Shown: positions 28,716 to 51,247, counted from the stretch's first letter. The stretch: DNA of 64,000 nucleotides from Camelus dromedarius (GCF_036321535.1 NC_087444.1:36456001-36520000), one strand, 5' to 3'. Translations and numbers: made by a program. The notes: generated from the letters alone by a model not told the origin.

Positions 28716-29149
28716 AGACTTCCTCTGCTGCTATAAGCCCTGACTTGTGTATTGTGGGGTGAGAGGGAGGCACTAGGTGCCACACACCAGGATTCACTCA
28801 TCAGGAGCTGCAGGCCTGGTGCTTTGTGGAGCACAGGACAAGGTGGGCTTTCCTAAAGCCTGGGATTGAACAGGGCACCTTGACAGTACAGCTTCTCACT
28901 CTCCTGGTTGAGTTGTTTAGATAGCCTGCCTTGTGCCTGCCTCTGCTAGGGGCATGGGGACTGGAGGAGCTGCACACACAGCTGTGGAATAGGGCTACAT
29001 GGAGCCAAGGGTGCAGGATGGGGAAGATCAGAGCTGTTCCTCCTAGCTCCCAAAAGGGCAGGCGAGACCCCACCTCTAGATAGGCCTTTTGAGTGCTAGG
29101 TGGGTGACAGAAGCACAAGAATTTAGAATCTGGGAGGGTGATAGCCACT

Positions 29150-29900: not shown

Positions 29901-30030
29901 TGCAGAGCTCAGGGCTCAGTCTGGACAATGGCCAGAAGGGAGAGATTTGTCCCTCTGTTCAGACGGGGCTGGGAAGGGAGAGCCAGGCAAAGGACATCTT
30001 CTCCAGCCCAAGCTGCCGAGGACCAGAGGT

Positions 30031-30092
30031 GAAAGTGAAAGAGAAGGTGCAGAAAGGGGCCAGCATGCTTTGAGGAAAGGTGAAAGCGAAAG
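30031..30092 (+). promoter_or_regulatory. Two IRF-E/ISRE-like elements in the PSMB10 promoter
   Basis: GAAAGTGAAAG at 30031-30041 and GAAAGCGAAAG at 30082-30092, 120-180 nt upstream of the ATG. Consistent with the known IFN-gamma/IRF1 inducibility of PSMB10. Confidence 0.75.
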
Positions 30093-30210
30093 GGGAAGCA
30101 TCAGACGTAGAGCCCACAGAGGACAAGGCTGCCGCCTTCCCGGCTCGGTGCTGATTCCACTCGTCTGACCATCGACCCCCAGTCCCTTGGACTGCCCTGC
30201 CCACCTGGAG

Positions 30211-32616
30211 ATGCAGAAGAAGGCGCTAGAGCCCCGAGGGGGCTTCTCCTTCGATAACTGCCAGAGGTCAGTTAGGGGATGGTTGGTCCCGAATGCTGTA
30301 AGGGCGTCCAGGAATGGGAGTCCCAGAGCCTTTAAAATTACTGGGGCAAGTATGGGGGAGGGTACGTGTGTGGTAAGACTTGGATTCCCAGGCCTTCCCC
30401 AGATGAGGGAGACCAGGAAGGAGTCGAGGGATGTGACGGGGTCCCAGAAGAACTGAAACCTGGGCCACTCTCTTCCGTTTTCAGAAACGCATCCTTGGAA
30501 CGTGCCCTCCCGGGGCTCCGGGTCCCTCATGCACGCAAGACCGGGACCACCATCGCAGGCCTTATGTTCCAAGTAAGCAGGGAATTGGACTGTGGGGCTT
30601 AGTGGGGCGGCCGGCAATGGGAGGTGGGCACTGAGCCAACGGCTCCTCCTCTTCGCCCCTCTCCCCAGGACGGGGTCATACTGGGCGCGGATACGCGGGC
30701 CACTGACGATTCAGTCGTGGCGGACAAGAGCTGCGAAAAAATCCACTTCATCGCCCCCAAAATCTAGTGAGAATTCCCGGGCCTGGTTCCCCCACTCAAG
30801 AACCACCCCATCGTCCCCATCCCGAGTCCCCGCACATCCTAGCCCCGCCCATACTGACCCTCCCTTCACCCTCAGCTGCTGTGGGGCTGGAGTAGCCGCG
30901 GACGCCGAGATGACCACGCGGATGGCGGCGTCCAACATAGAGCTACACACGCTGTCCACGGGCAGGGAGCCCCGAGTGGCCACGGTCACGCGCATCCTGC
31001 GCCAGACGCTCTTCCGGTACTGGGGCGGGACTAAGATGACTCTGGGGAGGGGCAGTTGCGGGGAGGGCGGGGCTGAGGAGGTAAGCCAGGAAAAAGGGCC
31101 AGGCTGCGAGGGTCTGGGAGACCGGAAGAGGCGGGCCTAAGAGGAGCTAAGAGAGCAACAGGAAGAAGCGATGCTGGTCATGGGGCGCCAGACCACGGGA
31201 AGGGGCGGGGCTCGGTTCAGGGGTGGAATAGTGGAGAGGCGGGACCTGGATCCGTGTGCGTTCGGCTGACTGCGCCCACTCCGCGAAAAGGTACCGTGGC
31301 TACGTCGGGGCTTCGCTGATCGTGGGTGGCGTAGACTTCACAGGGCCGCAGCTCTACAGCGTGCACCCCCATGGCTCTTACAGCCGTCTGCCCTTCACGG
31401 CCCTGGGTAAGCACTTCCGCCCCTTCCCCACGAACCCCACCCATGTTTGTCCTGGCCTCACGTTTGTCCCGCGACGGGGCGGCCGAGGCTAACCTCAGAC
31501 ACCCCTCCTGCCTGCAGGCTCCGGCCAAGACGCAGCCCTAGCAGTGCTGGAGGACCGGTTCCAGCCGAACATGACGGTGAGCGACACCCGCCCCCCACTA
31601 TGCGTGCATTGGTGGGACGTACCCCCGGGAGCTGGGGAAACACAGAGGTACCCCGGCCTAGTCTGGAAGTCGGGAAGGGCTTCTGGGAGGTGACGACTAA
31701 GTGGAGACTGAGGGGCCAGTGGAGTGATGGTGGAGAAGTGCTAGTCCAGCAGACCACCGTCAGTGCCAAAGCTTGGACTGCCCCCGAGAAGTCGAAAGTC
31801 AGAGAGAACCATTTGGAGCTGAGGGAGGAGGTAACAGCAGGTGGGGGCTGGTGGGTTTTGTTTGTGGTGGATGGAAGCAGAAGACGTTGCTTCAAAGCTG
31901 TCTAAGGCCCAGAAAGAAAAAGGCAGTGAGCCGGGGACCGGGGGCTAAGACCACCTTGAGTGGGTGGACAGGCAAGAGCCATATCTGTGACTCAGAGTAG
32001 TTTGTGAAGACAGGGGGCAGTGGGAACACAGGGTCTCTGGAGAGAAGGAAACCTAAAACAAAGGAAGAGGAGCTTGGGGTGGAGACGGGGGTGTACAGGA
32101 AGAGAAGGGTTTGGGTGTGAGCAAATGGCAAATAGTCCAGGCTTAAAGATTAACAAAGTCTCAAGGTTGTAGCCTGAGGGTGATACCAGAAGGGTCCACC
32201 CAGCCTCATATACACACACATTACAGCTGGAGGCAGCACAGGTGCTGCTAGTGGAAGCCATCACTGCAGGGATCCTGGGTGACCTGGGCTCTGGGGGCAG
32301 TGTGGATGCATGTGTGATCACGGGGACTAGTGCCAAGCTGCTGAGAACACTGAGCTCTCCCACAAAGCCCATAGAAAGGTAGGAGCATGGAGATGGGGGA
32401 CCACAGGGGAGGATGGGGTGGTAGCAAGGGAGATAGGGGGCTGCAAAGAGAGGATGGGCCACGTGATGGGCCCATGTTGCGAGGTCATCCCTTCTCCTTC
32501 CCAGGTCCAGCCAGTACCGCTTTGTCCCTGGGACCACAGCCGTCCTGTCTGAAACAGTGATGCCACTGACCCTGGAGCTCTTGGAGGAAACGGTGCAGGC
32601 CATGGATGTGGAGTGA
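30211..32616 (+). CDS. PSMB10: Immunoproteasome subunit beta-2i (MECL-1), 8 exons, 273 aa
   Basis: Exons 30211-30266, 30485-30572, 30669-30766, 30876-31016, 31291-31406, 31518-31576, 32227-32378, 32505-32616; sum 822 nt. Propeptide cleavage site RKTG|TTIAG with catalytic Thr, CEKIH and GSG motifs present; ends VQAMDVE*. Confidence 0.97.
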
Positions 32617-32650
32617 TGCTGGCAGAGGCTTAGAGATTGGAACAAGGAAG

Positions 32651-32656
32651 AATAAA
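32651..32656 (+). terminator. Polyadenylation signal of PSMB10
   Basis: AATAAA 35 nt after the stop codon. Confidence 0.85.
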
Positions 32657-34537
32657 CCCAAAGAACGCAAACACCTAAACACATGGCTGTATCGTTCTTG
32701 GGTGGAGGGGGACAAGCAGCCAGCAGGACTCTGTGGCTAAGGTATCCCTCCAGGGACGACTCCCTCCCATGGCTTCAGTGCCTGACCTAAGAGGTGTCCT
32801 TCACCCGTCACCAAAGGCATCTATCTACCTTTCCAGAATCCCAGCCCTGGCAAGCACTGAAGACTCAAGGTGTAAAGCCCCCTCCTGACTCTCCACACCC
32901 ACTCCCATGCCCTCTAGTCCACTGGGAACTGTTATAAAACCCAAAAGGCCCTATGTACTGCCCCCACCAAAGCCTTTACCTGGCTCATCAATGGCCCAGG
33001 ATAAAGCTCACACCTCTCAGTCGGGCCCCGCTGCCCCCACGAATGGCTAAAATGCTAATGGAGGAGCTGCTTCCTGACTCCAAGGGCAAGTTCTCACAGG
33101 TACACTCCTCACCCCTGCAACGCCTTTATCTGTGAAACCCCTCCGATGACCAGGCACACCTGAGGTGCTAACACAACACTGGGCATCTGTTTACACACGC
33201 TGGGCTGTGAATAGGGGAATTGACTCCAAGTTTTCTGTGCTGACAGGGGTCACAAGGCTCATGTGGGGAGAGATGACACGACACATTTATCCAGTAGACT
33301 TTTGTTCAGCATCCACCGGGTGCCATCCCAGGTGCTCGGTGCTGACAGAAGCATCCTGTCCTGGCAGAGAATGGCTGAGCTCCACTGGAGCTTTGGACCT
33401 GTTAAAGTCTTCCCAACCTCTGGGGAGGGTCTATTCCAGACTGGACATCTCTGGGACCCTGACTGTGCTTTTTTCTCCAGTATTTTATTACGAAGATTTT
33501 TAAACATAAAGGTTGAAAGAATTGTACATTGATCACCTTTATATCCACCACAGACTTTACAATTAGTATGCTGTTATATTTGTTTTATCACTGATTTATC
33601 CATCCATTCCTCTAATCGACAATTAACTAATTTTTTTGGGCTGATAACGTTCTTGAATCATTCAAAGCCCTCATACCCCTTGAAGGAGGCCAGCCAACTT
33701 ACCTATTGCAGCTTTGTAGACAGGAGCGTCTTCTCTCCCTCAGTTCAGGCTCAGCCTGGAACTCTACAGTGAATGGGCTGTAGATAGCAGGGGCTTGTCC
33801 ATGGGAACCCCAAGGCCTGGAAGCTGTCAAAGATTTGATGGCTGTCACCCTTCCACCTGTGACCCCCATCCAGTGTTGAGCATCACACCTTGCCCTCCTG
33901 TACACCAGGCCCCTTCCAGGTATCATCTCATCACGAAGAGTGTGGGCTTCGGAGCAAGGCAGATAAAGGTTTGGGTCCAAATGAACATTGTAGTGGGAGA
34001 GTCACCATCTCTAAGCAAACTGTGACTCCTGTTCCAAACTGATGAGGAATCACTGAAATGATATATTAGGATATGCAACCTGCCAGAACCCCCGACCTGG
34101 CCACATGGCCCTGGCCCTCAACAGTGGAGCGGGTAACAGCTGGAGTTTCCTTCCACCAGTCAGAACACCCCTGGGTGCTCAGCAGGCTTCTCTGAGTCTG
34201 GTGTCCCTGATAGCCTGGGAGACTTTCCTGATCCCAGCCACCAGGTAGTCACTGTAAGTCTAACCTTAATTCCTTGGTAACTGGTGCTCAGTACTTAGGA
34301 TGTGAGGTGGTTCTAGGAGCCAATAATAGGCCAGGCTTTAGGGGAGTGAAGGAGATGGGAACCTCACACCTGGACTCCAGTAAGTCAGGGCCTGGGTCAA
34401 GGACCTCGGCCTAAAGAGACCCTCCTCCTGACTAGAGCATGGGAGGGGGCTGAACCTACACAGCTGGCTTGGCCTTAGGCCCAAGGACAAGGAATGCCAT
34501 AAAGCCAGGCCCAGTTCTCAGCCTCATGCCTATCACA

Positions 34538-36367
34538 ATGTTGCTGCTCAGACTGACCCTTGGCCCCTCAGCTGGCTCGAAGGAAAGCAGGTAGACAGAA
34601 TGGGCAAAGGAAAAAGGATGTGCCAGGGCTGGGAGGAGGCAAGAGGTAGGCAATCCTACAAATGGGACAGGAGCTTGGGCCAGGCCCAGGGGGAGGGTTT
34701 AGGAGGCTGAGAAGCAATGGTTGGACCTGTAGTTTAGGAAGAGCCCTTAACCTGCATGCAGGGTATGGATCATTGAAATCTGGAGTGGGTGGAGAGGCTA
34801 GGGAGGAGACTATCCCAGGGATCAGGGAGAAAGATGGCCTGGGCTGGGGGGTCGGGGTGGAGTTGAGAAATGGTAGGGAGTAGGTTGGAGAGATGTGGGA
34901 GAATGGACAGAACCTGGAGGCTAGGGATGCAGGCAGCTGAGATAGCTACAGGCCCAGAGGTGCTAAGGGTGAGAAGGGGTAATGAGTCTTCTCGATTTGG
35001 ACCCCTCTGGGGGGCTTACCCTGGGGACACCCAGGAGGAGGTGAGAGGTAGGTTGGGATGTGGGAAACAAGTCCTCACCAGCCCAATGGCAGGCTGCGGT
35101 GTTCCTGACATCAAACCGGTGCTGAGCTTCAGCTAGAGTGCTGTCAATGGGGAGAAGGTAGTGCTGGGCTCCTGGCCCTGCCAGGTATCCCTGCAGGTAC
35201 ATGCACCCTGGGGGTGGGGCAAGATCCCAGGTGCTTCATGCCTAGGCATAGCCTGAGTGCACCGTATGTCTGACCCCTGAACCCAGGACAGCAAAGGCTT
35301 TCACTTCTGTGGTGGTTCCCTCATCAGCCAGGCCTGGATGGTCATTGCTGCCTACTGCAATGTTGTATGAGTGCTTCCCCTCTACCTGCCCCACCCCAGT
35401 CCCCACCTCCTCAACTCCTTTGTCCTGGATGCCCCTCTCTTGTCACTCTGCCCTCCCTGCGGCTGCCCAATCCCACTCTTACTGCAGCCACTTTGTCATC
35501 CTGGGCGAGTAAGACCCATCATCCAGTGCTGAGACTTTGCAGGTTCTGTCCATCTCTCGGGTGAGTCCCTGGGCTGCAGATAGGGAAGGAAGAGTGGGTG
35601 GTGCAGGTGTGTGGGCTCTGGGGATGAGGAATTCAGGACATGCCTAGCCTAGCCTCCTCAGCACCCATTACCTGGGGGCCTGTGCCCACTCCCATCCTAC
35701 ATGGCCCCTTCCTGGCTCCACAGGCCATCACGCACCCCTCCTGGAACCCCACCACCATCAATAATGATCTTACACTACTGAAGCTCGCCTCCCCAGCCCA
35801 GTATACAACATATATCTCACCAGTTTGCCTGGCTTCCTCAAATGAGGTGCTGCCTGAAGGCCTCATGTTGTCACCACTGGCTGGGGCCGCCTCAGTGGCA
35901 TGAGTAGGAACTTGGATCAAAAATCTGGATGGGAGTGTAGGGTGGGGACAAGTCATCTGGGGGCTAACCACCCCCTCTTGGCCCATAGGCAATGTGACTC
36001 CGGCATGCCTGCAGCAGGTGGTTCTGCCCCTGGTCACCGTCAGTCAATGCCAGCAGTACTGGGGCTCACATATCACCAACTCCATGATCTGTGCAAGTGC
36101 TTCAAGGGCCTTCTTGTGCCAGGTGAGCACCAGCACCCCATCCTGTACTCTGCACCTCGTGGCACCCTGCACCCCCCACGCTGACTTCGCCCTTCTTCCC
36201 CTCAGGAATGACTCCAGAGGTCCTCTTATCAGCCAGAATGGGAATGGGTGGGTGCTTACTAGTATTGTTTCCCGGGGCACCAGTGACTGCAATGTGTGTG
36301 CACCTGCCACGTACACTCGGGTTAGCAAGTTCAGCACCTGGGTCAATCAGGCATAGCTTACAACTGA
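34538..36367 (+). pseudogene. CTRL: Chymotrypsin-like protease CTRL, unprocessed unitary pseudogene
   Basis: Exon relics at 34538-~34565, 35093-35196, 35287-35366, 35488-35560, 35724-35903, 35989-36122 and 36206-36367 (GCGVPDIKPVLSFS, GFHFCGGSLIS, NNDLTLLKLASPAQYT, YTRVSKFSTWVNQ), in the syntenic position between PSMB10 and PSKH1. In-frame stops TAG 35134-35136 and TAA 35510-35512, catalytic His to Tyr, a lost splice donor and frameshifts. Confidence 0.93.
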
Positions 36368-36655
36368 GCCCACCAGAGGCCCTCTCCCCATCTCAGTCCA
36401 GTAAAGACCCCAGGCTATGTCCTCTCGTATATTCCTGTCTGTCTTCCTGGCTCAGGGAAAAGGAGAGGCTCTTGGGGGTCCCACTCCACACACTGACTTT
36501 GTCTTCTGGCATGGCAGGTGTTGAGGAGTCAGGATCCTCCCAGACTAGCCACGACCAGGTTGGGCTCCCCCACCTCCTTGGCAACCCCTTGGTCCACAGC
36601 AAGGAGACTGGGCTGTCAGAACGAATGGGCAGCCTTCCCTGGGGAAGGCAGCCTG

Positions 36656-36661
36656 TTTATT
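36656..36661 (-). terminator. Polyadenylation signal of PSKH1
   Basis: AATAAA on the minus strand (TTTATT on plus), about 1.95 kb downstream of the PSKH1 stop and preceded by an AU-rich 3' UTR end. Confidence 0.75.
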
Positions 36662-38604
36662 GAGTATGGAGGATACATTTACAAACTGAGTACACAAAAT
36701 AAATAACTGCACATTCTCCATCCACAGTCTGTAGCATACAGGCCCAAGTCTCCAAACTCCCTCTGTCTTATCCTCAGGACCAGGTCCACCCTGGCCGACA
36801 GGAAATAAATCCCCAGGCCTTTAGGCCCCAGAGGCACTTTGGGAAATAGGAGGAATTCTGAGGCCATGGGGCTTTGGCTTTCCACTGCCTGGTGCTGGGA
36901 GCACTGGGGACAGAAGGAAGGGGTATATAAGGCACAGTTGACTTGGCCCAGAGTGGTCTCTTTTAGCTTGGTTTCCCACTGGAGATGGCACATGCAAAAA
37001 GAGGAGGGCCTCCCTCAAGGGTACCCACTGAGAGGAACTGAGGGCTAAACCCTCCCTGCTGGCAGGGGCCCTGCAATCCTGCTAAGGCTATAGCTGGGCC
37101 CTGGCTCCTTCCCACCCACAGAAAGTAGCTGTGGAGGGAGGGGGCTTGAGTTCCAGCCCTGCTTGTGGTGGGAGGAGGCACTGTGGCTGATAGGGGGATG
37201 GTCTGGCTCAGGCCTCTGGGAAAGAGGCCACCTAATTCCACCCACCTCTTGCAGGGGCTCCCTCCAGTCTGAGATTCAGCAGGGCCCCGACTGGAAGAGT
37301 AATGCTATGAAAACAAGCGGGGACAGGCTGGACCAGGCAAGGCCACCTGTGAAAAGGCCGGTGCCCCAGGCACTCAGGGTTCAGAGGCAGGTCACACAGT
37401 ATGGCTAAGTTCCAGGGGAAGCTGCACAGAAGCTCAGCAGAAGGGGAGAGAACTGAGCAGCCCTGGGACCCTCCCTCAGTGCAGCAGCTCCTTCCTCCCC
37501 ACTTCCTCTTAGAGGACGAAAGGTGAGCAAGGTGGTCATTCCTAGGCTGCCCATACTTGTGCCAGACACTAGATGGCACCTTCATGCAGCTGCAGAAGAG
37601 AGAACATCAGAGCTGAAGGGAGAGGCAGTGGGCAATACCAAGTGTGAAACCAGGGCTGACACTGGAATCCTGATGAGGCTCTCCCTGGGAAGCCCCTGCC
37701 CTTTGCTTTGGCCCAGGTGCCCCCACCCCCAGGTGCCCCCACCCTCCAGGTAGCAGCAGTGGGGCTCCTTTTAGTCCCCCCACAGTTGGGAAGGAGGCAC
37801 CTGGGGAACAGAATGGGCACCCAAGGGGTAGAGGGAGGTGATGGTAGGCTCTGTAAAGCAGGCACTGAGAGCAGTAGGCTGGTGGGCAGAAACTCTCTCA
37901 TAGACGGAGAGGTTGGAGCCTGGAGCAAGCCTGCTATCAACACAGCCACACAGTCCAGAGGGCCAAGGACCATTCCATGGCCTTACCACCAGAGAGCCTG
38001 ACAAGTCCTAGGGCCAGAGGAGGGGTCCCTGGGGGCACCATGAAGCAAGATAGGTCTTGGCTGGGAGGTGGAGGGCTGTTTAGACTTAGCCAGGGATTGA
38101 GAGTCCAGCCAAGGCACAAGCTGTGTGCCTCCCTGGGCCTCTCACCAGAGCATAATCATAAGGATCAGGATGCCATGGAATATGGGGGGGTGGACAAGGG
38201 GGAAGAGTCAGGGAGGAAGGCCTGGTGGAGGAAAGGCGGGTTCCAGAAGTAACTGTCCCAAAGAGTCCTGGGACCAGAGGACACCGTCTACCTGGCATTG
38301 CATGCTCCTCTGGTCTGGGGAAGAGCCAAGAAGTGAGACCAAAGGCCAGGGCTTGCCCTTTCCCTAACTGGTACCAGAGTAGTTGCCCACCAAAAGTCGC
38401 ATCCGTGCCAGGCCAGGCTCCCAGTTCACCAGGCTCAGGCCCAGGGTGAAGATGGGGGCTGCTGAAGGCACAGAGAAGGGGTTGGGGCCATTCACCTACC
38501 ACCGGCCATACAAGCCCATCTCTAGAGAGGGCACTGGGCCCAGATGGCACAGCAATGTGTGGCCAGGCTGGGACCATGCCATGTCTGCAGCCCAGCCAGG
38601 TGGC

Positions 38605-41600
38605 TCAGCCATTGTACTGCTGCTGGTAGCGCAGGTTAAGCTCCCGCAGCTCTCGCTCCCGCACACGGCGTGACTTGTTGGAGCGTGTAGAGCGGCTGGA
38701 ACGTGTGGACTGGGCAGATTTGGTGCTCTGGCAGCGCGATGAGGCACGTTTGAGGAGGTTTTGGGAGATGGAGCGGTGCAGATTCTTCATAGATGAAGAG
38801 GCTGCCATGCTCACCACCCATGGATGCCTCAGGGCCTGCAGTGCAGTCATTCGAGCGCCGGGGTCCACTGTCAGCAGGCGGTCAATGAAGTCCTTGGCCA
38901 GGTTGGACACGCTGGGCCAGGGCTAGAGGCCAACGACAAGTATTAGAGTGAGTGCATTTAACACTGCCCTCCCCATCCTGACGATGTCACCACCACAGCA
39001 CTCAGACCTGTCCAGCAGCCCTGCTGCATTCTCCTCCTAGAGAGAGGCGCTGCCTGGCTCCTCCCATGTAGAATGTTCTAGGCTTCCCCTTCCCGCCAAT
39101 GCTGGCCCAGGCTGCCGAGCAGAGGTTGCTCTCTGGGTGAGGAGTCTGACAAGGGAGAAAGACCTGCTCCCTCCCCAAGGAGCAAACTTCTAAGGTGCCC
39201 GGGACTCAGAGTCTGGCTCAGGAAAGTGGCCCCTGTCAAGACCACCCAACCTACCCTTGGACCAGTATAACTCAGAGAAATTTAATGAGAATGGTCCAAA
39301 CCTTCCACCATATCTTGAGCCAGACTTAAGCTCCCACCCCTGAATGCCCATATCAAGCCACTTCCTAGTTCTTAAAGACAAAGTCCACCCTCCTTCCAAC
39401 TGACAAAGTGGTCAAAATGACCACTGCATTCTCTACATCAGCCTCAGCCTCTCAGCCATGGGGAGAAAAGGAAACAATTCAAGGCAACTAGATTTCTCCA
39501 TCTGCTGAGAGGGCAGGGGGGACATGGGACCCTGGCAGGGACCAGGACCCTTCTCAGGGCACTTCTCCAGTCTGCATGACATCTCTAAGCCACACAGTGG
39601 CTCCTGGCAGTGCCCTGTGCTAGCCTCATTTTAGTATGTGCTGTCCTCACAGAGGAGCTGATCAAAGCCTGCTCTGCTACATGTACCCACAGCTGCTTTG
39701 TCTCAGCCAGACACCAAGCAGCCATCCATCTCCAGCCCTCAGCCTGCACAGCTTGTCACTGGGCTGAATCTCAGGTCCTCAGGGTAAAGGACACTCACTC
39801 ATATTTCCCTGCAGGCCTGTGTAGCTCAGGGCTCTGGTAATGAGGCCGACCTGCAGGGTGACTGAATTGGTCAGGCACATAGTAGCTTTTGGCTCACAGT
39901 TCAAGAAAACCCCATGGCTTGCTGCTGCCACCTGAACACAAAGAGCCATTATGAGGGGCCAGCCAACCTAGACCACAGACACTCACTGTGGCCCCTGTCA
40001 TTCATCTGAGAGATGGAAAGAAGCAGGCATAATGGGGCCACTGATAGCCACAGCAAACCTAAAGCTGGAACAGGTTGGGTCATGAGAATACTGTGCTGCC
40101 CTGCCAGCTTTTATGGTCTCCAAGAAAAGGAGAAATCACTGGGGAGCACACTGCAGCTCAGCCTGGCCTGTTGGTGGGGCAGCTCCAAACAGAGCTGGCA
40201 GCCCAGGCTAGCCAAACAGGGCTGGGACATGGATTCTGCTCCTGGCCCTTGCTCCAGTCAAGAGAGAAGAGGGGCAACTCCTCTGCAGATGACAAAATAA
40301 ATAGAGGCAAAGCTGGACTCACAAGTCAGGAACCTGAATATGGATGGATCAGAGGCATCCTCACTTCACATCCATACCCAGCCAAACCAAGGCCCCCTGC
40401 AGCTCCAGTGCAGTCTTAGATGGGCCTCTCACCAGACTTGCACCACGGCTTAAGCATCTGCATCTCCAGAGTGACACAGGCTCACACTAGGCATCAACCC
40501 CTGCTGCTTGTTGCCATTAGCGCCAAAGTGAGCCAGACTGATCTGCCCCTCCTCCTCCCCTAGACACTCGCCTCTCCAATTACTGTGTACCTGCAGCTGT
40601 GTGCAGAATGCCAACGGGCTCATTAGTTGGAGGGCCAGCCTACCCTCTCTGGCAGGCCCCAGATCTCCCCATGTTTGAAGAGCTGTGAGCAGCTAGACCA
40701 GGTGGGTCCCCTAAGCCAGTGTGACTCAGCGTCCTGACCTGAGAACCGGGCTGTGCAATGGTACCCAGCCTCACCCTCACACACTGAGGAACACACTGAC
40801 TTGCAGCAGGAAGTCAAACAGGCTGAACATAGGAAGGTGGTCTTCAAGCCAGCCCACTGACATCAGGGCAGGGACTTATGTTGACCTCCAGAACAGTGGC
40901 CCCTGGGAGCCCAGCTGAGGCCTCAAACAGGGCTCAAAAAGGAAAAACAAGGCTTTCCACACTCACCCATGGCCTTGATTCTGGCTAAGTCCATTCAGTA
41001 CCTCCTAAGAAAGCAGTCAACTCCTGCAGACCAACCCATCTCCTTCCCCAACATATGCGGGTCTCTGGAGCCACAAGAGCACAAGAGTATGTCTGGGAGC
41101 CTATGACTAACTGGCCAGGTAGCTTTCTGTTCCTCACAGGCAGCCAAGTGAGGGAAAAAAAATAGGTATGAGAAGAAGAAAAATGGTCAACTGTCATGTC
41201 CTTCGGCTCCTAACTGCAGGCTGTGGGTAAAGGACAGAACCCTTGCCCCAGTATACTTGGGCCCAGATCAGGGACACATGTGGATCACAGGTGGCTGACA
41301 AAAGGGACAGGCCCCAGGTACCACCTGGCCGGTCTCCCAGAGGCTTCCACCTGTTTTTGGGCTGGCATGGAACATGGAAGGGAATGTTAAAATGTCAGGC
41401 TGCTTTGCCTCCAGACACTCAGGTCTCCCTCTGCTGTGTGATCAGAGGACAGCTGCAACACCCAGGGTGACAGCCCATACCCTCCTGGCCACAAATCTCT
41501 GAGCTGTGTGAGTAAGCAGCTGGGTTCTGCCCAGAGGACAAGGAGAGGCTATGGGAGAAAGGGTATCACCTCCCCACTGTTTCTGACCATCAAACTGGCT

Positions 41601-44600
41601 GCCTTTCTCCCTAGCCTGTAACCCCTAGAGTCCTTGCATTTTGAGTATGTACTTCTGATGCTGTAACAGCAGAGAAGCCAACAGGGTAGAGGAAAAACCT
41701 CCCCCATGAGCACTTCCTTATCAACTTCACCCTCTTTATCCCTCTGCTTCTGTGGGACTAGTCATTCCTCAGCAGCAGAATCTAACTCTCCCTTCAGAGG
41801 GAGGCACCAGACCAGAAGGGGCTTTCCATTTCAGCTCAGAGGACACACTTCCTTCTGCCCCAGCCCCATTTACTTGCTCTAATGGCATAAGGGCCTGGCA
41901 ATAACATTACTCAAGTCACTACCATTGTCCTGCCTTGAGTCCAAGGGCTAAGGGAACAAAGGCTGGAACCAACTCTCTTGGCCTAGGCTGCAGAGGGAGG
42001 AGGAAGCTGCCTCCTTCTAACAGCAAACTCAGCTCACAGGGCTTGCCCTAGACAGGCCTGACCACTTGCAAGTGAGGGGAGAAAAAGGCATTGTGTTTCT
42101 TCTGGATGGCATCTGGGTGACAGATTAAGTGTTGGGCTGCAAGCCCAATGACCTGCATTCTAGGTCTACCTTCTCTGTTGACCATAGAGAAATCACAGCC
42201 TCCTCACTTAATATTAATGCAATGAATTCTAAGTCTCTTCTAGTTTCTAAAGTCCTGGATTCTAAAAAGATGGTTCCCCATCTTTCTTCCTCACTTGGCT
42301 GCATGTGAGGAACACGTAACATTTCAGCTGACTTGACCTCTTGACCTCTATGGATTCTTTTCCAGCCCATGATGATTCTGGGGAAGGTTCTCTGGCAGAG
42401 AAGGAAGCCCCAGCAAAGAGCTGCTAGAAGAAGGAAGGGAGGAAAAAAGCCTGGGCTCTGCTCCCATGACTCAGTTCTTCCCTCAGCTTTGTCTCAAGAT
42501 GTGTTCTCAGACCCAGCATTCCCACCCTCATAGGCTTCCTTCCTGTACTTACGTGGGCCTAAATGAGAGCAGAGAAAAGGGCACAGAGGAAATTCTGGGA
42601 AATGGAGCTTCAGGTTTACTCGGGAGAGCAGAATGATCAGTATGACAAGAACAGCACACTCTGATGTTGACCATGAGGAAAAGTGCTTTGAAAAAATAAG
42701 CAGAATTAGACACTGTGTGCTGGTGGAGCCAGCATCCCCTCCTCTGGTTAAGATACTCACCCTCCTGGTGTCTGGACTTCTAACACCAGACAGAATCCAC
42801 CACCCTGGGACCTGGCAGGGAATGGGTGGGGGTCTGAGCAGCAGAAAAGAAAAGGATGTTGGGGGAGAGAGCATGAGAGGAGAAAAAGAAGGAAGATAAT
42901 AGTTTGTACAAGAGGCAGAGAATGAAGATAAAAATGAGAAAAGGTGCGACAACTTAAAGGTTAATAGACCTGTATTCTAAAACTTGAGGTGAATAACCAA
43001 ATGAAATCTTGCACCCCACCTGTCCCTGCCCAGAGTCCACAAAGTGAAGGACAAGGACATGAGGGAGTGGGGTACAACTCAAGAGTCAGGAAGGATGCTG
43101 TGTGCTTGCTTTGGAATCAGAGATGTTGGCAACCTATGCCAGCAACTGAGTAATGTCTGCTTTAACAATGTCCTGGAGCAGCCCTAGAAGGTTCTGCATT
43201 TCAGAGCCAGCTGCATGGTGTTCTTTTCTGTCTCCATTCAAGGGTTCTGCTGAAGTGAGGTGATTTCCAGGACTCAACCTGGCTCTTTTTTTTTTTTTAA
43301 ACTTCCTCTCATTCTAATTTCTGAGACAATTTGCATCCCTGGTGGCTGTTAGCAGGTCACCCATACTGTGGCCTCTGTCCCCAGAGGTCTGTGTTCCTGG
43401 AACCCTTGGTACAGGACTCAGCTCAGGGCAGGCACTTGGTCTCCATGGGATGGCAAGATGAGTGAAGAAATGAAGGTGACTCAGCCTTGTGCCCCAAGCC
43501 AGCCAAGCCATGCAGGAGCAACATTCAGGTCTGGGCACTACACTTGCACTGGGAGGCAGAGAAACCTAGGCCAGGAAGACACGCACAAGAAGGGTGACCT
43601 TGTGTGAAGGAGGCTAGAGAGGCACAGTTGGTGGGGTGTGGTTGGATCAGGTCACCCTCAACCACCTCAGTGGGGACAGGAGGGGGATAATGTGGAAGGC
43701 CAGCAGCAGATTTAAAGAGGTCAGAATGTGGGAGAAACAGCAGCCCCAGCAGCTCCCAGAGGAACTTGAAGGCCTAGACGCAACAGAAGCAAGAGCAACT
43801 CTGAAAGGGCAGAGCTACCCAGGTGGAGACAGACAATGAGAAGAGTACGAGAGGGAGGGGACGGATGGGACACTGGGAGCTGCCTGAATACAACCCACGA
43901 TACACCACTTTGTTGGAGAGGCCTCAGCAGAGCTGGGAAATAGCAGTGATGAAAGGAGGCTCTGACCCTGTGTTAACGAGATGCCGTAGGTAGTCAGAGC
44001 AAGGTGCTTCGATAAAAATAGCTAAATGCAGCAATGTGGGGAGGTGGGCATCTGTCTCTGCAACCAGGACAGCAACAGCAGAGGGATGCCTATAGGACAG
44101 GGCTCCAGGAAGCCAAGAGGTGGCCCAAGGGTGGCACATGAGGGGGCTGCTGCCCCTCTCCACTCAGAGCCTGCCTCCTGCACCGATGAAGAGAGAGCTG
44201 CCCCACCTTCCTCCAAGAGGTCTCCAACCACAGTGACCAGTGAGGGTCCACTGCCCACACCCAGTGGACCAAACCATGCTACCTCCGAGTGACCAGTCAG
44301 GGATCTGGACTGAGGGTGTCTGCTCCCTCAGTAAATGAGGGAGACTTATTTGTTGAACATCCACTGGGTACCAGCTTTGGTGAGGTAGAGATGGCCATTC
44401 CAGAGGGAACCTTCCTGGACAAGTTATGGGGGCATCTACTTGGCCTCTTGGGATCCTCACATAGAGCCAGCATTACCATCCAGCACTTAACACCTGGCAG
44501 CCACCAGCAGGCAGGCAAGGAAGAAGAGCTTCATAGGAAAGAATTCTAAAATCAGTCTGTTTTCTTGTGCTGTCAGCTATTGACACAGATACGGGAAAGC

Positions 44601-47600
44601 CATCCTCTGACTTACTAGGGGTGGGCAGCAAGAGAAGAGTGGTGAACTGATGGTCCACCACAACCCCCATCCACACTGGAGGTGGGAACATGAGACAATT
44701 AAAGGCATCCGGCAGAAGCCAAGCACGAGCCTGGAAACATGCCACCTGCCTCCCTGCATTCCACTCTGCTGCCTGCACACATCCGGTCTCCAGCTCTCCC
44801 ACACCCATGGGGTATTCGTCCCCATGGCTCTGGGGCAAGGTCCTATCCCTGCTCACCCAGCTGCTCCTGTCAGAGTACACGAACGAGGTTGCACGTCCAG
44901 TCCCCACAGGTGCTAGCCCCCTTCACCTGGAGAGCACTGGGACACACTACACTCGCTGAACCTCATTTTATCTTCAACAAGTGTCAGAGTCACTTTAAGG
45001 ACTGGGGAAGAGCTGGGATGGGAATGTGAATGTCAGCTCTGGCTCTGGGCACTCATCCTACTGCAGGGCTATCAGAACTACCAGACAGTATAACTCACTG
45101 CCCCAAGCAAGTGCCCCTTGGCCCAAATGGATGGATGGTCAGCTTGCAGCCTGGAGAGCCACTCCTGGAAAGCCACCTCCCACCAACCCAATACTCCGGG
45201 AAGTGGCAGATCAGCCCTGCAGGTGGGCTTCTTCTCCCACCAGGATTCTGTACCCTGCCCAGCAGCACTTACTCTCCTGAATAAGGTTTGGTGAGAACCT
45301 TTGCCCAAGCCCACTTGTTCCTGGTACAGTCACCTGGGCTCGCCCACAGCTCAGAGACTACTCAAGCAGAGGAGGGTGACAATTAAAGGTTCCTAAACGT
45401 GGCAGACAGCAAAGCTACTGATGGCATCACTCTGTCATCAATCCCACAAGGGCCCCTTCATCCATCCTGCCTCTAGGAATAGAACTCTTGACAAAAGCAA
45501 TGACATTAGGCCCACAACGTCACATTTCATGTCAAGTGAATCACAGAATTTCCAAGTTGATGGGACCATAACAGTCCTCTAGGAGGGTACAAAGATGGTG
45601 ACTCACCTCCTGTGTCATTCCTCTAGAAGCAGCTGCTCCAGACCTCCCAGGGCCTCCTATGACAGGAAGCTCCCTCTTTCAAGGTGACTCTGTGTCTACA
45701 AATTGTTCTCACACTCACACAGGCCTTCCTCACATCTGGCCAACATATGTCTCCCCATCACTTCCAATACGACCCTAGCTTGGCTCTCTCCCCTCCAGCA
45801 CCTCTGGTCACTGGGTAAAATTTCAGATTTCTCTTCTCAAAATCATTTGTCACAGCCTTCTCCTTTCCAGCACTCTCTTCTCTTCCAAGATTCCTGCATT
45901 TCCTTCTAAGCAGGCCTGGCCAGCAGCCCCTAAGTACATCTCTAGCAGGCGTCCCACTTCTTGGATTCCAGCTCCCAGAAGAGAACATTCCCAGCCAGCA
46001 GGAGCAGCCCCGTCTGCTTGACAGCTATTTACTTCTGGGTCCTTCCCAGGGCATCACCAATAACCACTGGTGCTTCACTTAGGAAAAGGAGGAGAAAGTA
46101 CTGGGAGCATATGTATTAATACACATGCTGTCCTCAAGGAACTTACAGGCTGGGGAGGAGAGTTATGTCCACAGACAATAGCCTGGGAAAGTGCTGAAAC
46201 AGACCCCAGCAACACAGTGAGGAATGTGTGTCAGGGAAAGTAGACTGTGGGGATGGAAAGGCCAAGAACTCTGAAGCCAAGATGGCCTGAATTCAAATCC
46301 CAGGCCTGCCTCCCTCTCTGTGAGACCCTGGACAAATTACTTAACCTCACTGGCCTCAGTTTACTCATCTGTAAAATGGGGGGGATTACACCCACTGGGA
46401 AGATTATTGTAGAGATTAGACATGTTGGGTGTAGAACCCTCAGATCTGTGCCTGGTACTCAGTAGAACTACACAATGGCAGCGGTTGGCATTATGTTTAA
46501 TGGAAGCAATCTTGAATTGGATGGTTTAAAGCTGGTCAAATTTCTAAGGCTGACATTGGGAACAGAGGGAAAAGCCTGAGCAAAAGCATAGAGTGGGGAG
46601 TGAAAGGAGCAAACATCTCAGGCCTACGGTATGTAGGGAATGGGGTGGAGTGTGGGGCCAGAGCTAGGGGTTAGAGTACTAGAATGTTGCGCTTATAGGG
46701 CAGGTGCTGAAGGAGGCCCCACTTCTGTGCTTCCCTCCACCGCTGGTCCCCATGCAGGGACATCAGGCAGGACTGTACACACTCTCTGGGTCAGAGGGCA
46801 GCCTGAAGTCCTCTCCCAATCTGCCTCATAAGCTGATGCTCCTCCTGCAAAGCTGCAAGAGCATTCTGTGCCCCACTCTGTTTCTCCCTCAGCTGTGGCT
46901 CACATGTACCATGTGGAGCTCAGTCTCTGGAATTCCCCATCTGCCCCAAACATCCCCAGGATACCAGGCTCCTCCATCCCAAAATTGGATTACTCCAACA
47001 GCCCCCAGTTAGCCTTCCCCCGCTAGTCTTCTGCAACAGTTCCTGCTACATTTCCCCTTCACTATCAAGAACCCAGAGGGCTCCCTCCCACCTAATGCTT
47101 TGATTTCCCAAATAATCCCTGGCACCACAGAGCTCCCAGAACCAAATACCAGGCCTGGTCCAACCTCATTAACCTCTGCTCCATTACTCCCAAACAATCT
47201 GTTTATTCTGGAGCACAGTTAGCGATATTGCCTTCTCTGAGCCTCCTCCTTCCCAAAGCCCACCCCCTCCAGGAAGCCCTCCATTCAAGTCCACAGAAAT
47301 CATAGAAGGCTACATGGACAGAACCCTTGAGAAATAAGCACGCTGGATAGGGCCTGGTGTATATGAGACACCACTATAAGCGGGCAAGGTGCCTATGAGA
47401 AAGGCACTGAGTGCCAGAGGACTTACTGTTGGTGAAGAATGCATACCTCCAAACCTTGATGAGCTCAAAGTTGGCACAAACTTTGCGCAAGAAACTAGAT
47501 AGAAACAGCCCCCGCAATCCAGCATGCTCTCAGATAGGTTTTCTGGCAGGGCCTTGCTCACTTAGATGGCTCTCATAAGGGTAAATGACCATCACACAGA

Positions 47601-50600
47601 AGACAGATGGCTGGAGGAGGGAGGGGACAGAGCCCAACCCTAAGAAGGGGGGCCAGTCCAGCCACCTGCCCCAAGCCCCATGGCCCACGTTCCAGATCAC
47701 CCAGGCCTGCGCTGGCATGTGCCTGCCAACAAGGGTTCATTCTGTGGCCATTTCCTATTCCTAGTCCTTTCTCCCAGACAATCTCAAGTTTCATGGGGAT
47801 GGGGAATAGGCCTTCATGTCTCTCTGCATCTTCCTCAGGTGCACTTACAGGTAGACAATGACCAGCAAAACAGAAAGACAGACGCCTGGTCTCCAGCTCA
47901 AAGAGCCTGATTTAATGATATCTCCTCACCCAGGAAACACCCCAAACAAACTCTTCCCAATCAGAGCTCTCTGCAGATGGTGGTAGAATCTGCTCTTGGG
48001 GTCAACCAAGCTCCTGGTAACAGACAGGTGCCGTCAGTGCTGGTCAGGGATTTGACTCTGGGACTGGGAACTGAGGCTTTCAACTTCAAGTGAAGGGTAG
48101 TGGGCTCCAAATGCTGGGCAGTGCCCATCCCCTACACTGGGAGCCCCAGACTCATGCCACATGATTCTAGCAGAGGAAGAAGCAGAGTCTCAGGACCCAG
48201 TCTGTGGCCACAACAGGAGCAAGAAGCCTGAGTCCATTCCCTATCCCATTCATTTGTCATTCTCTCACCCTCAGATAATCAATAACCAGTTAGCAAGACT
48301 CTGCAAGCTCCAATGAGATAAACTGCCTGATCAACAATTGCCAGAATCAGGAACTCGTGAGCCAATCTACAGACTTTTGGAAAGAGTCTTCCTTTGTCAG
48401 CATCTCTTGGGAAACTTCCCTCCCTCCCTCCCTCCCACAGATAAGCTACACCACACATAGCTCCAAGGGCAAGTCACACAGGGCCCTGGCACAACACTGC
48501 CTGTGAGGTGAATTCTGTGCGTTCTGACCATGATGAAACCCAGCCCAGAGGGTGAGCAGGACAGTGTCCTCTGTGACCATCCCATTACAGCCCAGGCATC
48601 TCAGCCAGTCAGTGTTTGTTTTATTGAATCCCATTTGGAGCAAGGAAGAAAACATAAAAACCTTTAGGGGAGAGCTGGAGAATGTCCCAGGTTCTCCTTC
48701 ACCTGTAGTCTCAGCACAGAGCTGGCCTGAAGAGGAAGGCTTCCCTCCCTTCTTCACACCATCCTGAAGCGCATGACCTGGCACATGATGCCAGCCCCCA
48801 TCCCCATGGGAGGGAAGTCCTTGGCTGACCACACAACGGTGCCCTGAAACTGACAGGGAGGATGATGGTGCACAGGATCTCAAGCACTAAAGGTACTTTG
48901 CCTTCATGAGACTTTGGGTGACTCCTGTAGGAAACACTGCTCTGGGCCAGTTGACTGAGGCCAGGGAGGGCCCAGCCCAAAAATCCCTGGGAGGAAAGCT
49001 GGGTTGCAGAAGTAAGCTAGTCCCAAAGCTCCTTCTCCTCTGCATGGGCTATTCAGGAGGCAAGGACAGCAGGCCTGAGAGGAACACTGTGGGGAGCACT
49101 CTGCAGGGGGCACTTGGGGAGGGGCCCTTGCTGTCTTGGCAGAATCCTGTCATCCTGCAAAGCTCACCTCACCTCCCACATAAAGCTGTCACCCATTCTT
49201 TCTTCACAACCTCCCCAAGCACACCACTATATTCCAGCTTGCAGTGCTTACCATTTCTGTAGTTAGCCTCATCTCCAACCCAGTCAGCATTCTGGCTAAG
49301 AATCAACCAGTTCTTACTTTTTCTGTACCTTCCTTTGGCTCCCAGCAGTGCTGAAACCTAACAGATCTTTTCAGGCATCAGGGCTATCAATGGATCCAAA
49401 GACACAAACTGATGGCCTGCCGGTTGAATTAGGCCCGCAGGTAAGCATTTTGTTGGGTTAAGTACAAGATATTGCTTAAGTATGTGAATTATATTCCAAT
49501 ATTTTAATATCAGATTTTCTGGCTTCTTTTTAAAAAACTGGAATGTCTGGGTGCATGGAGTCCTCTCTGCTGTGTGTCAAAACTGGGCAGAGATGAGAAG
49601 CAACTGTTCCTTTAGACAGGGCATCGTCACTAGACTGCCCTAGCACTCATGAGCAGATGTTGTGGACTCCCTGCCCCCACTTCCTCTCAGCCCATCTCTG
49701 AGCTCGCCTGCAGTTGTGGTGCTCCTGTGCAAGCGGACAGCTTCACACTGCTGCATCTCTCTGCCTCTTTGCCTGAGGACTTTCTCCAGCGCTAGGTGGC
49801 ATTCAGCACAGCCCAAAAGTGCCAGAGATTTAATGACCCCCCTCACCTCGAAGAAATTCTCAACTCATACTAGAGCCAGATTAAGCCCACCCACTTTCCC
49901 GCCTCTCAGTGGTATGATTCTGAGGTATGTTCCACATGATTATTCACAGGGTCCCCAGTGGGACTGAGTTCCAGTGGCCCACAGTAGCAGTCCACTCCTT
50001 CATATACCCCTTATTGTCTTCTTTTCTGTCTCACTTTCCCCACTCTTCACTTATGCTTACTGGAATCACAATTAAACTATCTAGTCCCAAGTCCTTGTCT
50101 CAGGCTTCACTTTTGAGAGAACCCAAACTAAGATACTCTACTAGTCTCACTTCATCATTTTTACATTATCTGCCTGGTCCCACGAACACGGCCTTCAGAG
50201 CACATCCCCCTGATTGAAGGCTGCAGGATAGAACCCCACACACCACACACACACAGGGGCCTCTCAGCATCCTGGGACGGGCAGACTCACCTCCCCCGAG
50301 TAACTGTACTTGCCCCTGAGGATCTGCCGGTACAGCCGGGTGCGGTTGTCATCCTCAAAGGGCATGGTGCCACTGAGCAGGATGTAGGCAATAACACCCA
50401 GGGCCCACATGTCGACTGAGTTGGTGTAGGGCTTGCGGACCAGGACCTCAGGGGCAATGTACTCGGGTGTGCCACAGGTGGTCTTCATCAGACAGTCGTC
50501 ACCCTTCTTGCGGGCACTGGCCAGACCAAAGTCGGTGATGATGATCTTGGAGTCAGTGCCTGGGTGGTAGTAGAGCAGATTCTCAGGCTTGAGGTCTCGG

Positions 50601-51247
50601 TGTGTGATGCCCAGTGCATGCAGATATCGGACGCCATCCAGTACCATCTGCAGTACCCGCGTGGCATCACGCTCAGTGAAAGAACCCTTGGCGATGATGC
50701 GGTCAAAGAGCTCTCCACCAGTGGCCAACTCCATCACCATGTACACGCGCTCCTGTGTCTCAAACACCTCCACCAGCTGGATGATGTTGGCGTGGCGCAC
50801 CCGGCGCAGTACACGCAGCTCTGATTCACAGACCTCCCGTCCCTCCCGGTACTTAGTCTCAATCATCTTAATGGCGTATGGCTGCCGGGTTGCCCGGTGC
50901 TCTACACGTACCACTCGGCTGAAGCTGCCTCGGCCAATCAGGGCTTTGATGTCATACTTGGCTGTCACACGTGGGTCAAACTTGGCCCTGTACTTAGCTA
51001 CCCTGGCCCTGCGTGGTGGTTCTGAGGGAGGCTCTGTGTGGCCAGTAGGGGGCACACTAGGGAATGGATTTGCACACTGACTGGCTGCTGGGAAACCAGC
51101 TTTGAGGGGGCCAACACTGTCCACCTCTGTGATGAAGTGCTTGTATACATCGCTCTTAGTGCCACTGAAGGGCTCCACCTTCTTGACCAGATCCAGCTGG
51201 ACATCCTTGGGCGGCTCAGGAAGGACTTTGCTTGTCCCACAGCCCAT
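38605..51247 (-). CDS. PSKH1: Serine/threonine-protein kinase H1, 2 coding exons, 424 aa
   Basis: Coding exons 51247-50291 (957 nt) and 38922-38605 (318 nt); sum 1275 nt. N-terminus MGCGTSK (myristoyl/palmitoyl motif); [24 protein letters not shown] and APE motifs intact; ends RYQQQYNG*. Confidence 0.98.
46265..46470 (+). mobile_element. MIR
   Basis: TTCAAATCCCAGG...AATTACTTAACCTCACTGGCCTCAGTTTACTCATCTGTAAAATGGGG...GTGCCTGGTACTCAGTAG. Confidence 0.85.
49850..50137 (+). mobile_element. ERVL (LTR16-like) LTR fragment
   Basis: Characteristic 3' end ATTAAACTA...CCCAAGTCCTTGTCTCAGGCT...GAGAACCCAAACTAAGA; internal CAGGGTCCCCAGTGGGACTGAG. Confidence 0.6.

What the first reader, a model, noticed from the sequence alone, without database searches (positions are those of the whole stretch)
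34538..36405. CTRL is a heavily decayed unitary pseudogene in an otherwise intact gene cluster
Seen in sequence, judged against the recalled human CTRL: exon 1 matches for about 27 nt (MLLLRLTLG), then loses the signal-peptide core and its donor. Exon 2 has TAG at 35134-35136, and the R|IVNG activation site becomes S-AVNG. In exon 3 the catalytic His57 motif TAAHC becomes IAAYC (35353-35355) and the expected donor reads ATGAGT (35367). Exon 4 is 73 nt (9 nt short) with TAA at 35510-35512. Exon 5 is 180 nt with a 1-nt deletion near 35868. Exon 7 has an extra base at its start, GDSGG becomes DSRG, SWG becomes SRG, and there is a 1-nt deletion near 36352. The poly(A) signal reads AGTAAA (36400-36405). 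About ten independent lesions next to four perfectly intact neighbours argue against sequencing error and for an old loss. Inference: a pancreatic protease was lost in a foregut-fermenting herbivore lineage. I do not know whether this loss has been published.
Basis: partly seen in the sequence, partly recalled or inferred. Interest (0 to 1): 0.72.

Follow-up and report, generated by a model that had tools for sequence, protein, structure and literature searches.

The report
Dead CTRL protease gene in dromedary
The dromedary camel's copy of CTRL, a minor pancreatic digestive protease, is a thoroughly broken gene sitting in its normal chromosomal place; the same gene is broken by different mutations in a deer, the hippo, whales and a rhino, so this is one more case of a repeatedly lost enzyme, not a camel peculiarity.

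Summary
I checked each against intact CTRL genes of a seal, a ferret and a desman fetched with tools.

- **Species:** the window is Camelus dromedarius, 99.97% identical over 18.3 kb to assembly CamDro3. None of the differences falls in CTRL.
- **Position:** the relic lies at the ancestral site, PSMB10-CTRL-PSKH1. It has all seven exons.
- **Lesions:** two nonsense codons, four frameshifts, an in-frame 9-nt deletion, two dead splice donors, His57Tyr, a destroyed Arg15-Ile16 activation site, Gly196Arg, Trp215Arg, Cys201Ser and an AGTAAA poly(A) signal. I add a 13-nt promoter deletion.
- **Not an error:** fourteen DNA-type runs from at least six studies hold all sampled 31-mers.
- **Other lineages:** CTRL is also a pseudogene in muntjac, hippo, minke whale, narwhal and white rhino, and none shares a lesion with the camel. 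The two cetaceans share four lesions with each other.
- **Timing:** branch dN/dS is about 0.2 in intact lineages and 0.53 in camel. This suggests a camel-lineage loss roughly 25 My ago (CI 6-58).
- **Published record:** CTRL loss is published for vampire bats and howler monkey. I found nothing for camels or other ungulates.
- **Not done:** other camelid genomes could not be fetched.

Verdict: a new member of a known kind, of moderate interest.

The parts
34352..34525 (+). Proximal promoter relic. The CACCTG and CAGCTG E-boxes and the CATAAAG TATA-like box are kept. A 13-nt deletion between 34478 and 34479 removes a CCTGGGACTTT element present in all eight other species.
   Evidence: upstream alignment
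34538..34582 (+). Exon 1 relic. The ATG is at 34538-40, with an upstream in-frame ATG at 34526. There is a 7-nt frameshifting deletion in the signal peptide. The orthologous donor at 34583-84 reads GA, not GT.
35093..35196 (+). Exon 2, 104 nt with no indel. Nonsense TAG at 35134-36. The activation site Arg15-Ile16 (AGG ATT) has become AGT GCT (Ser-Ala) at 35137-42. A Trp>Cys change is also present.
35287..35368 (+). Exon 3 (35287-35366) plus its donor. Catalytic His57 CAC>TAC at 35353-55. Donor GT>AT at 35367-68.
35488..35560 (+). Exon 4, 73 nt instead of 82 because of an in-frame 9-nt deletion at its 5' end. Nonsense TAA at 35510-12.
35724..35903 (+). Exon 5, 180 nt instead of 181. The 1-nt deletion at 35866/67 lies in a GTGTGT tract that is also hit by other deletions in muntjac, cetaceans and rhino. 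Asp102 codon is kept.
35989..36122 (+). Exon 6, 134 nt, with no indel and both splice sites intact. It is the only exon seen spliced in RNA, in one contig that joins 31830|35989 and 36122|48275.
36206..36367 (+). Exon 7. A 1-nt insertion at 36207-08. The Ser195 codon is kept, but Gly196 GGA>AGA at 36216-18. Cys201 TGC>AGC and Trp215 TGG>CGG. A 1-nt deletion at 36351/52. TGA stop at 36365-67.
36400..36405 (+). Poly(A) signal variant AGTAAA. Seal, ferret, desman, muntjac, minke, narwhal and rhino have AATAAA.
30211..32616 (+). Upstream neighbour PSMB10, annotated with a 273-aa product in CamDro3. It anchors synteny.
38605..51247 (-). Downstream neighbour PSKH1, convergent with CTRL, annotated with a 424-aa product. 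Its large coding exon (50291-51247) is an open frame 97-98% identical to other mammals.

Best explanation
Window 34.35-36.41 kb holds the orthologous remains of CTRL (chymotrypsin-like protease, an S1 serine protease zymogen of pancreatic acinar cells) in Camelus dromedarius. It is a fixed, non-processed, unitary pseudogene.

No functional protease can be made from it:
- the signal peptide is frameshifted;
- two splice donors are dead;
- there are two premature stops and four frameshifts;
- even a read-through product would lack catalytic His57, the Arg15-Ile16 activation cleavage site, the oxyanion-hole Gly196, Trp215 of the substrate cleft and one disulfide cysteine.

Shown: the lesions, their presence in two assemblies and many runs, and the orthologous position.

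Inferred: the gene stayed under purifying selection on the early camelid branch. It drifted neutrally for roughly the last 40% of that branch, about 25 My with a very wide interval. This is independent of the separate inactivations in ruminant, hippo, cetacean and rhino lineages.

Inferred from mouse knockout data as quoted in PMC8956264: the loss was tolerated because CTRL is a minor chymotrypsin isoform (about 10% of the pool in mouse) whose knockout has mild effects. Other chymotrypsins presumably cover its digestive role. Its trypsinogen-degrading activity is lost with it.
For: - Raw sequence and translations.
- Pfam Trypsin hits for the exon pieces.
- Exact exon model of an intact orthologue.
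- Exon-by-exon alignments against three intact and five broken orthologues, with an automatic lesion list.
- Identity to CamDro3 of 99.973% over 18,255 bp, with no difference inside CTRL.
- Fourteen DNA-type runs, at least 9 samples and 6 studies, each with 100% of 215 sampled 31-mers.
- Synteny PSMB10-CTRL-PSKH1 in camel, muntjac, hippo, seal, minke and rhino.
- No normal camelid CTRL protein among the hits. The only one is a 131-aa GenBank model that translates exon 6, intron 6 and exon 7.
- Branch dN/dS: camel 0.53 (0.32-0.92) against intact lineages 0.22 (0.16-0.32).
- Promoter deletion.
- Weakened poly(A) signal.
Against: - No raw reads were seen. Read laying returned almost nothing because a filter dropped the genomic contigs, so support rests on k-mer shares and a second assembly of the same species.
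- No whole-genome search for another CTRL copy was possible.
- Other camelids (Bactrian camels, alpaca, llama) were not examined, so 'old' rests on lesion count and a noisy dN/dS estimate.
- The dating uses NG86 distances fitted by least squares on only about 260 codons.
- Redundancy with CTRB and CTRC in camel was not checked.
Confidence: 0.93

Rival explanations
1. CTRL was already inactivated, for example by a regulatory or missense change, in the common ancestor of Cetartiodactyla or of Euungulata. The different frameshifts and stops in camel, ruminant, hippo, whales and rhino would then be later, independent decay of one ancient loss.
For: - All five sampled ungulate and whale lineages are broken.
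- No normal-length CTRL model from any artiodactyl or perissodactyl appears in the protein search.
- The second position of codon Ile16 is C in camel (GCT), muntjac (ACT) and hippo (ACT), but T in every intact species.
- The confidence interval for the deep stems is wide (0.10-0.96).
Against: - No ORF-disrupting or splice lesion is shared between camel and any other lineage.
- Cetaceans and rhino keep ATT at codon 16.
- Camel branch dN/dS of 0.53 (CI 0.32-0.92) excludes neutrality over the whole branch. The cetacean stem is 0.27 and the pooled deep stems 0.29.
- The promoter deletions in camel and muntjac differ.
Confidence: 0.15
2. The lesions are assembly or sequencing artefacts, or a rare null allele, and dromedaries normally carry a working CTRL.
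For: Only contig-level evidence is available; no raw reads could be laid.
Against: - About 17 separate lesions are identical in two assemblies.
- All sampled k-mers are found in 14 runs from at least 6 studies.
- RefSeq-type annotations yield no camelid CTRL protein.
Confidence: 0.01
3. The locus has been reused. It is no longer a protease gene, but parts of it, above all exon 6 with its intact splice sites, serve as exons of a plus-strand read-through or non-coding transcript. That transcript starts in PSMB10 and runs antisense into PSKH1.
For: - One 321-nt RNA contig (run X19, depth 9) joins window 31830 to 35989. It covers exon 6 exactly (35989-36122) and continues with 10 nt that match only 48275, directly after a CAG acceptor.
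- Four RNA libraries hold 88-90% of the locus k-mers.
Against: - This is a single contig in one run.
- The RNA libraries may contain DNA.
- No conservation or function of such a transcript is shown. Splicing noise in read-through transcripts is common.
Confidence: 0.06

Closest known systems
CTRL loss in vampire bats (Blumer et al. 2022, PMC8956264; bioRxiv 10.64898/2026.07.24.740446)
   Same: The same gene, inactivated by multiple mutations at the orthologous locus. It is interpreted as tolerated or diet-related loss of a minor, tissue-restricted pancreatic chymotrypsin.
   Different: A different order and diet (blood feeder against desert foregut fermenter), and different lesions. That work screened bats only.
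CTRL among lost pancreatic-secretion genes of the howler monkey (PMC13651202)
   Same: CTRL loss reported in a herbivore or folivore, by a TOGA-type gene-loss call.
   Different: A primate. CTRL is listed with six other lost pancreatic genes, and no lesion details were read here.
Functional CTRL of seal, ferret, desman and other mammals (P0303, P0316, P0328)
   Same: The same seven-exon structure, the same flanking genes, and 75-85% nucleotide identity in the exons.
   Different: These keep the open frame, the His57-Asp102-Ser195 triad, the Arg15-Ile16 activation site, canonical splice sites and AATAAA. Their dN/dS is about 0.2.
Recurrent loss of PNLIPRP1 in herbivores (as cited in PMC13651202)
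   Same: A pancreatic secretory gene lost convergently in several mammalian lineages.
   Different: PNLIPRP1 loss tracks herbivory. CTRL loss as seen here also includes fish- and krill-eating cetaceans and blood-feeding bats, so a single dietary driver is not evident.

Membership tests
CTRL orthologue (chymotrypsin-like protease, S1 family) | Position between PSMB10 and PSKH1, same strand as PSMB10 | tested here: met
CTRL orthologue (chymotrypsin-like protease, S1 family) | Seven colinear exons with trypsin-domain similarity | tested here: met
   Pfam PF00089 hits for pieces of exons 3, 5, 6 and 7; all seven exons aligned
Functional S1 serine protease zymogen | Uninterrupted reading frame with signal peptide | tested here: not met
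   TAG at 35134, TAA at 35510, and frameshifts in exons 1, 5 and 7 (two in exon 7)
Functional S1 serine protease zymogen | Catalytic triad His57, Asp102, Ser195 | tested here: not met
   His57 codon is TAC (Tyr); Asp102 GAT and Ser195 TCC are kept
Functional S1 serine protease zymogen | Arg15-Ile16 activation cleavage site | tested here: not met
   AGT GCT (Ser-Ala) instead of AGG ATT
Functional S1 serine protease zymogen | Canonical GT-AG splice sites at all six introns | tested here: not met
   Exon 1 donor GA, exon 3 donor AT
Unitary pseudogene | Orthologue intact and constrained in related species | tested here: met
   Seal, ferret and desman have intact genes; dN/dS 0.16-0.21
Unitary pseudogene | Disabling mutations fixed in the species | tested here: inconclusive
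   Identical in two assemblies; 100% k-mer share in 14 runs from at least 9 samples. No read-level allele frequencies.
Unitary pseudogene | No functional paralogous copy of the same gene elsewhere in the genome | not testable with these tools
   Indirect only: no camelid CTRL protein. No whole-genome search was available.

The most novel reading that the evidence does not exclude
CTRL is a hot spot of convergent gene loss. It has been inactivated independently in at least five lineages of Euungulata (camel, a ruminant, hippo, the cetacean stem, rhino), irrespective of diet, on top of the published losses in vampire bats and howler monkey. Living artiodactyls may therefore lack CTRL altogether. 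A corollary follows. The 'positive selection on CTRL' reported for river dolphins (PMC13433582) would then be relaxed evolution of a pseudogene, because minke whale and narwhal share four disabling lesions that predate the split of baleen and toothed whales.
Probability: 0.55. Interest if true: 0.55.

Novelty: new member of a known kind. Interest (0 to 1): 0.4.

Why it matters
CTRL is one of four mammalian chymotrypsinogen genes. In vitro it cleaves trypsinogens, and in mouse its knockout slightly raises trypsin activity (as quoted in PMC8956264).

- **Natural knockout:** camels, and apparently ruminants, hippo, whales and rhino, live without CTRL. This gives a set of natural knockouts for asking what CTRL is for. 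It also warns against treating CTRL as a coding gene in selection scans of these groups.
- **Annotation error:** it flags a bogus 131-aa 'CTRL-1' protein in the CamDro3 GenBank annotation.
- **Limits:** this is an ordinary gene-loss case and not a new mechanism. The pattern may already be visible in public gene-loss tables that I could not search.

Tried and rejected
- **Read laying:** the genomic contigs of X12 and X14 and the RNA contigs of X15 were left out by a filter.
- **Organism B (X19):** its contigs are near-identical to the window, so it is not a divergent relative and gave no cross-species test.
- **Other camelid loci:** PSKH1 is too conserved, so all mammals fall in one 90% cluster and no camelid was among the listed members. 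The PSMB10 and LCAT exons are too short for the length window of the search for homologous proteins. The ORF-based search found only the dromedary model P0455.
- **Horse and hedgehog look-ups:** both failed.
- **Pig look-up:** it returned only short Logan contigs of the PSKH1 exon. Pig, cow and horse CTRL were therefore not examined.
- **iqtree2 ancestral reconstruction:** I did not attempt it by another route and used pairwise NG86 distances fitted to a fixed tree instead.
- **Rejected idea:** that RefSeq 'PSMB10 isoform X2' proteins listed in a CTRL cluster are PSMB10-CTRL chimeras. Their sequences are plain PSMB10 with an alternative C-terminus.
- **Rejected idea:** that the exon 5 2-nt deletion shared by cetaceans and rhino marks common ancestry. 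The hippo lacks it, and the site is a GT repeat hit four different ways.
- **Literature:** searches for camel, artiodactyl or ruminant CTRL loss found nothing.

Full report
**What is there**

The stretch 34.3-36.6 kb translates, exon by exon, into recognisable chymotrypsin-like protease pieces interrupted by stops. Pieces of exons 3, 5, 6 and 7 hit Pfam Trypsin PF00089. The exon 5 piece is closest to chymotrypsinogen B among solved structures.

The window carries these genes in order:
- the last exon of LCAT (ORF 28089-28715);
- PSMB10;
- this relic;
- PSKH1 on the minus strand, with its large exon at 50291-51247.

That is the conserved SLC12A4-LCAT-PSMB10-CTRL-PSKH1 arrangement.

**Species**

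A search with the ORF that runs through exon 6, intron 6 and exon 7 found a 131-aa GenBank model named 'Chymotrypsin-like protease CTRL-1 [Camelus dromedarius]' (P0455).

- Its locus (L008, assembly GCA_000803125.3, CM016635.2) is 99.973% identical to window 26105-44359 over 18,255 bp.
- The only differences are at 31959, 37906 and 42699-701, all outside CTRL.
- The window is therefore dromedary, and a second assembly carries every lesion.
- Earlier notes of this scan had also called the genome dromedary. I confirmed that here.

**Checking the lesions**

I derived the exact exon model of an intact orthologue, the elephant seal (L003). Its seven exons of 64/104/80/82/181/134/162 nt translate exactly to P0303. 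I then aligned each exon with 12-nt flanks to the window and to eight other loci. A script listed indels, stops and splice dinucleotides.

| Feature | Coordinates | Lesions |
|---|---|---|
| Exon 1 | 34538-34582 | 7-nt deletion; donor GT>GA |
| Exon 2 | 35093-35196 | CAG>TAG at 35134; Arg15-Ile16 AGG ATT > AGT GCT; a Trp>Cys |
| Exon 3 | 35287-35366 | His57 CAC>TAC at 35353; donor GT>AT at 35367 |
| Exon 4 | 35488-35560 | 9-nt in-frame deletion; TAC>TAA at 35510 |
| Exon 5 | 35724-35903 | 1-nt deletion at 35866/67 |
| Exon 6 | 35989-36122 | none (no indel) |
| Exon 7 | 36206-36367 | +1 nt at its start; Gly196Arg; Cys201Ser; Trp215Arg; 1-nt deletion at 36351/52 |
| Poly(A) signal | 36400-36405 | AGTAAA, where seven species have AATAAA |

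I add a 13-nt promoter deletion between 34478 and 34479. It removes a CCTGGGACTTT element present in all eight other species, downstream of the CAGCTG E-box. That this element is a PTF1-type TC-box is my recollection and was not tested.

**Is it real?**

Fourteen DNA-type runs of one organism, from at least nine samples and six studies, hold 100% of 215 sampled 31-mers of 34400-36500. Laying contigs failed to add anything, because a filter removed the relevant contigs. With about 17 lesions reproduced in two assemblies, artefact or rare allele is not credible.

**Unitary?**

The relic sits at the ancestral position, so it is the orthologue and not a decayed duplicate. In a search with a cetacean CTRL region, no camelid protein appeared among the 120 best hits. 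No cow, sheep, pig or horse protein appeared either. Carnivores, rodents, primates, bats, insectivores and afrotherians all gave 264-268-aa proteins (cluster contents). This is indirect evidence; a genome-wide scan was not possible.

**Wider pattern**

The odd cetartiodactyl and rhino gene models led me to fetch their loci. All are syntenic and all are broken, each in its own way:

- **Muntjac:** exon 3 donor GG; deletions of 2, 1, 9, 7, 2 and 9 nt; a TGG>TGA stop; a 15-nt promoter deletion that removes the E-box.
- **Hippo:** ATG>GTG; a 2-nt deletion; two acceptors AG>GG; a 1-nt insertion.
- **Minke whale and narwhal:** both share a 2-nt deletion in exon 5, a 1-nt deletion in exon 6, a 5-nt deletion in exon 7 and loss of the stop codon. 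The gene therefore died before baleen and toothed whales split. Narwhal adds ATG>GTG and Ser195 TCT>TGT.
- **White rhino:** exon 1 donor lost; 1-, 2- and 1-nt deletions; a 1-nt insertion; the same Gly196Arg CpG change as the camel.

No disabling lesion is shared between the camel and any other lineage.

The GTGTGT tract in exon 5 is hit in four different ways: -1 in camel, -2 in cetaceans and rhino, -7 in muntjac, and intact in hippo. It is a slippage hot spot and not a shared mark.

One observation remains unexplained. The second base of codon Ile16 is C in camel (GCT), muntjac (ACT) and hippo (ACT), but T in whales, rhino and all intact species.

**Timing**

Instead I computed pairwise Nei-Gojobori dN and dS and fitted branch lengths to a fixed tree by non-negative least squares, with 400 codon bootstraps.

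| Branch | dN/dS (95% CI) |
|---|---|
| Intact lineages | 0.22 (0.16-0.32) |
| Camel | 0.53 (0.32-0.92) |
| Rhino | 0.44 |
| Hippo | 0.70 |
| Muntjac | 0.77 |
| Cetacean crown | 1.28 |
| Cetacean stem | 0.27 |
| Pooled deep ungulate stems | 0.29 (0.10-0.96) |

The camel value excludes neutrality along the whole branch since the split from other artiodactyls. It implies relaxed evolution for about 40% of that branch. For a branch of 60-65 My (my assumption from general knowledge), that is roughly 25 My, with a CI of 6-58.

This favours independent losses, with the camel loss near or before the camel-llama split. The estimate is coarse, and other camelids were not available to test it.

**How it works**

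It does not work as a protease gene. The product is abolished at several levels: promoter element, signal peptide, splicing, reading frame, catalytic and activation residues, and poly(A) signal.

According to the mouse work quoted in PMC8956264, CTRL makes up about 10% of chymotrypsinogens and cleaves trypsinogens in vitro. Its knockout gives reduced chymotrypsin activation and slightly higher trypsin activity. That fits a dispensable gene that drifts to loss when constraint relaxes. Whether the loss was neutral or advantageous in camels cannot be told from this evidence.

**Known or new**

CTRL loss is published for the common vampire bat and all vampire bats. It is also listed for a howler monkey. 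Five literature searches found nothing on camels, ruminants, hippo, whales or rhino. One 2026 paper treats cetacean CTRL as a positively selected coding gene, which my alignments make doubtful. Much of the subscription literature and the public gene-loss tables were not searchable.

I class the finding as a new member of a known kind.

Noticed in passing
L004 (minke whale) 5294-7304 and L010 (narwhal) CTRL region: The two cetaceans share four disabling CTRL lesions: exon 5 -2, exon 6 -1, exon 7 -5, and stop codon lost. Narwhal also has ATG>GTG and Ser195>Cys. A 2026 paper (PMC13433582) reports 'positive selection' on CTRL in five river cetaceans. That signal may be relaxed evolution of a pseudogene.
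   Followed up: partly
window 31799-31830, 35989-36122, 48275-48284 (+ strand): One 321-nt RNA contig (run X19) joins a GAG|GTAACA donor inside the PSMB10 gene span to CTRL exon 6 exactly. It then continues with 10 nt found only at 48275, right after a CAG acceptor inside a PSKH1 intron. This looks like a plus-strand read-through transcript that uses the dead gene's only undamaged exon.
   Followed up: partly
window 35994-36356 (+); L008 8001-10252: The CamDro3 GenBank annotation carries a 131-aa 'Chymotrypsin-like protease CTRL-1' (P0455). It is an artefact: it translates exon 6, the 83-nt intron 6 and exon 7. These stay in frame only because of the 1-nt insertion at the start of exon 7.
   Followed up: yes
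exon 5, window 35860-35872 and the same columns in L001, L004, L005, L010: A GTGTGT tract in CTRL exon 5 carries a different deletion in nearly every pseudogene lineage: -1 in camel, -2 in cetaceans and white rhino, -7 in muntjac. It is a slippage hot spot that could be mistaken for a shared ancestral lesion.
   Followed up: yes
codon Ile16, window 35140-35142; L001 and L002 same column: The second base of the activation-site Ile16 codon is C in camel (GCT), muntjac (ACT) and hippo (ACT), but T in whales, rhino and all intact species. It could be homoplasy, incomplete lineage sorting, or a trace of an older weakening mutation. This is unexplained.
   Followed up: no
L005 (white rhino) 5306-7303; P0167 (black rhino): Rhinoceros CTRL is a pseudogene as well. 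The white rhino locus L005 carries the exon 1 donor loss and four frameshifts. The white and black rhino gene models show the same frame-shifted pattern, which suggests a loss older than the split between the two rhinos. Horse and tapir were not examined.
   Followed up: partly
window 34400-36500 in RNA runs X15-X18: Four RNA libraries labelled as reproductive-system metagenome or metatranscriptome hold 88-90% of the k-mers of the whole locus, introns included. This is either DNA carry-over or unspliced read-through RNA. I could not tell which, because the contigs were filtered out when laid.
   Followed up: partly
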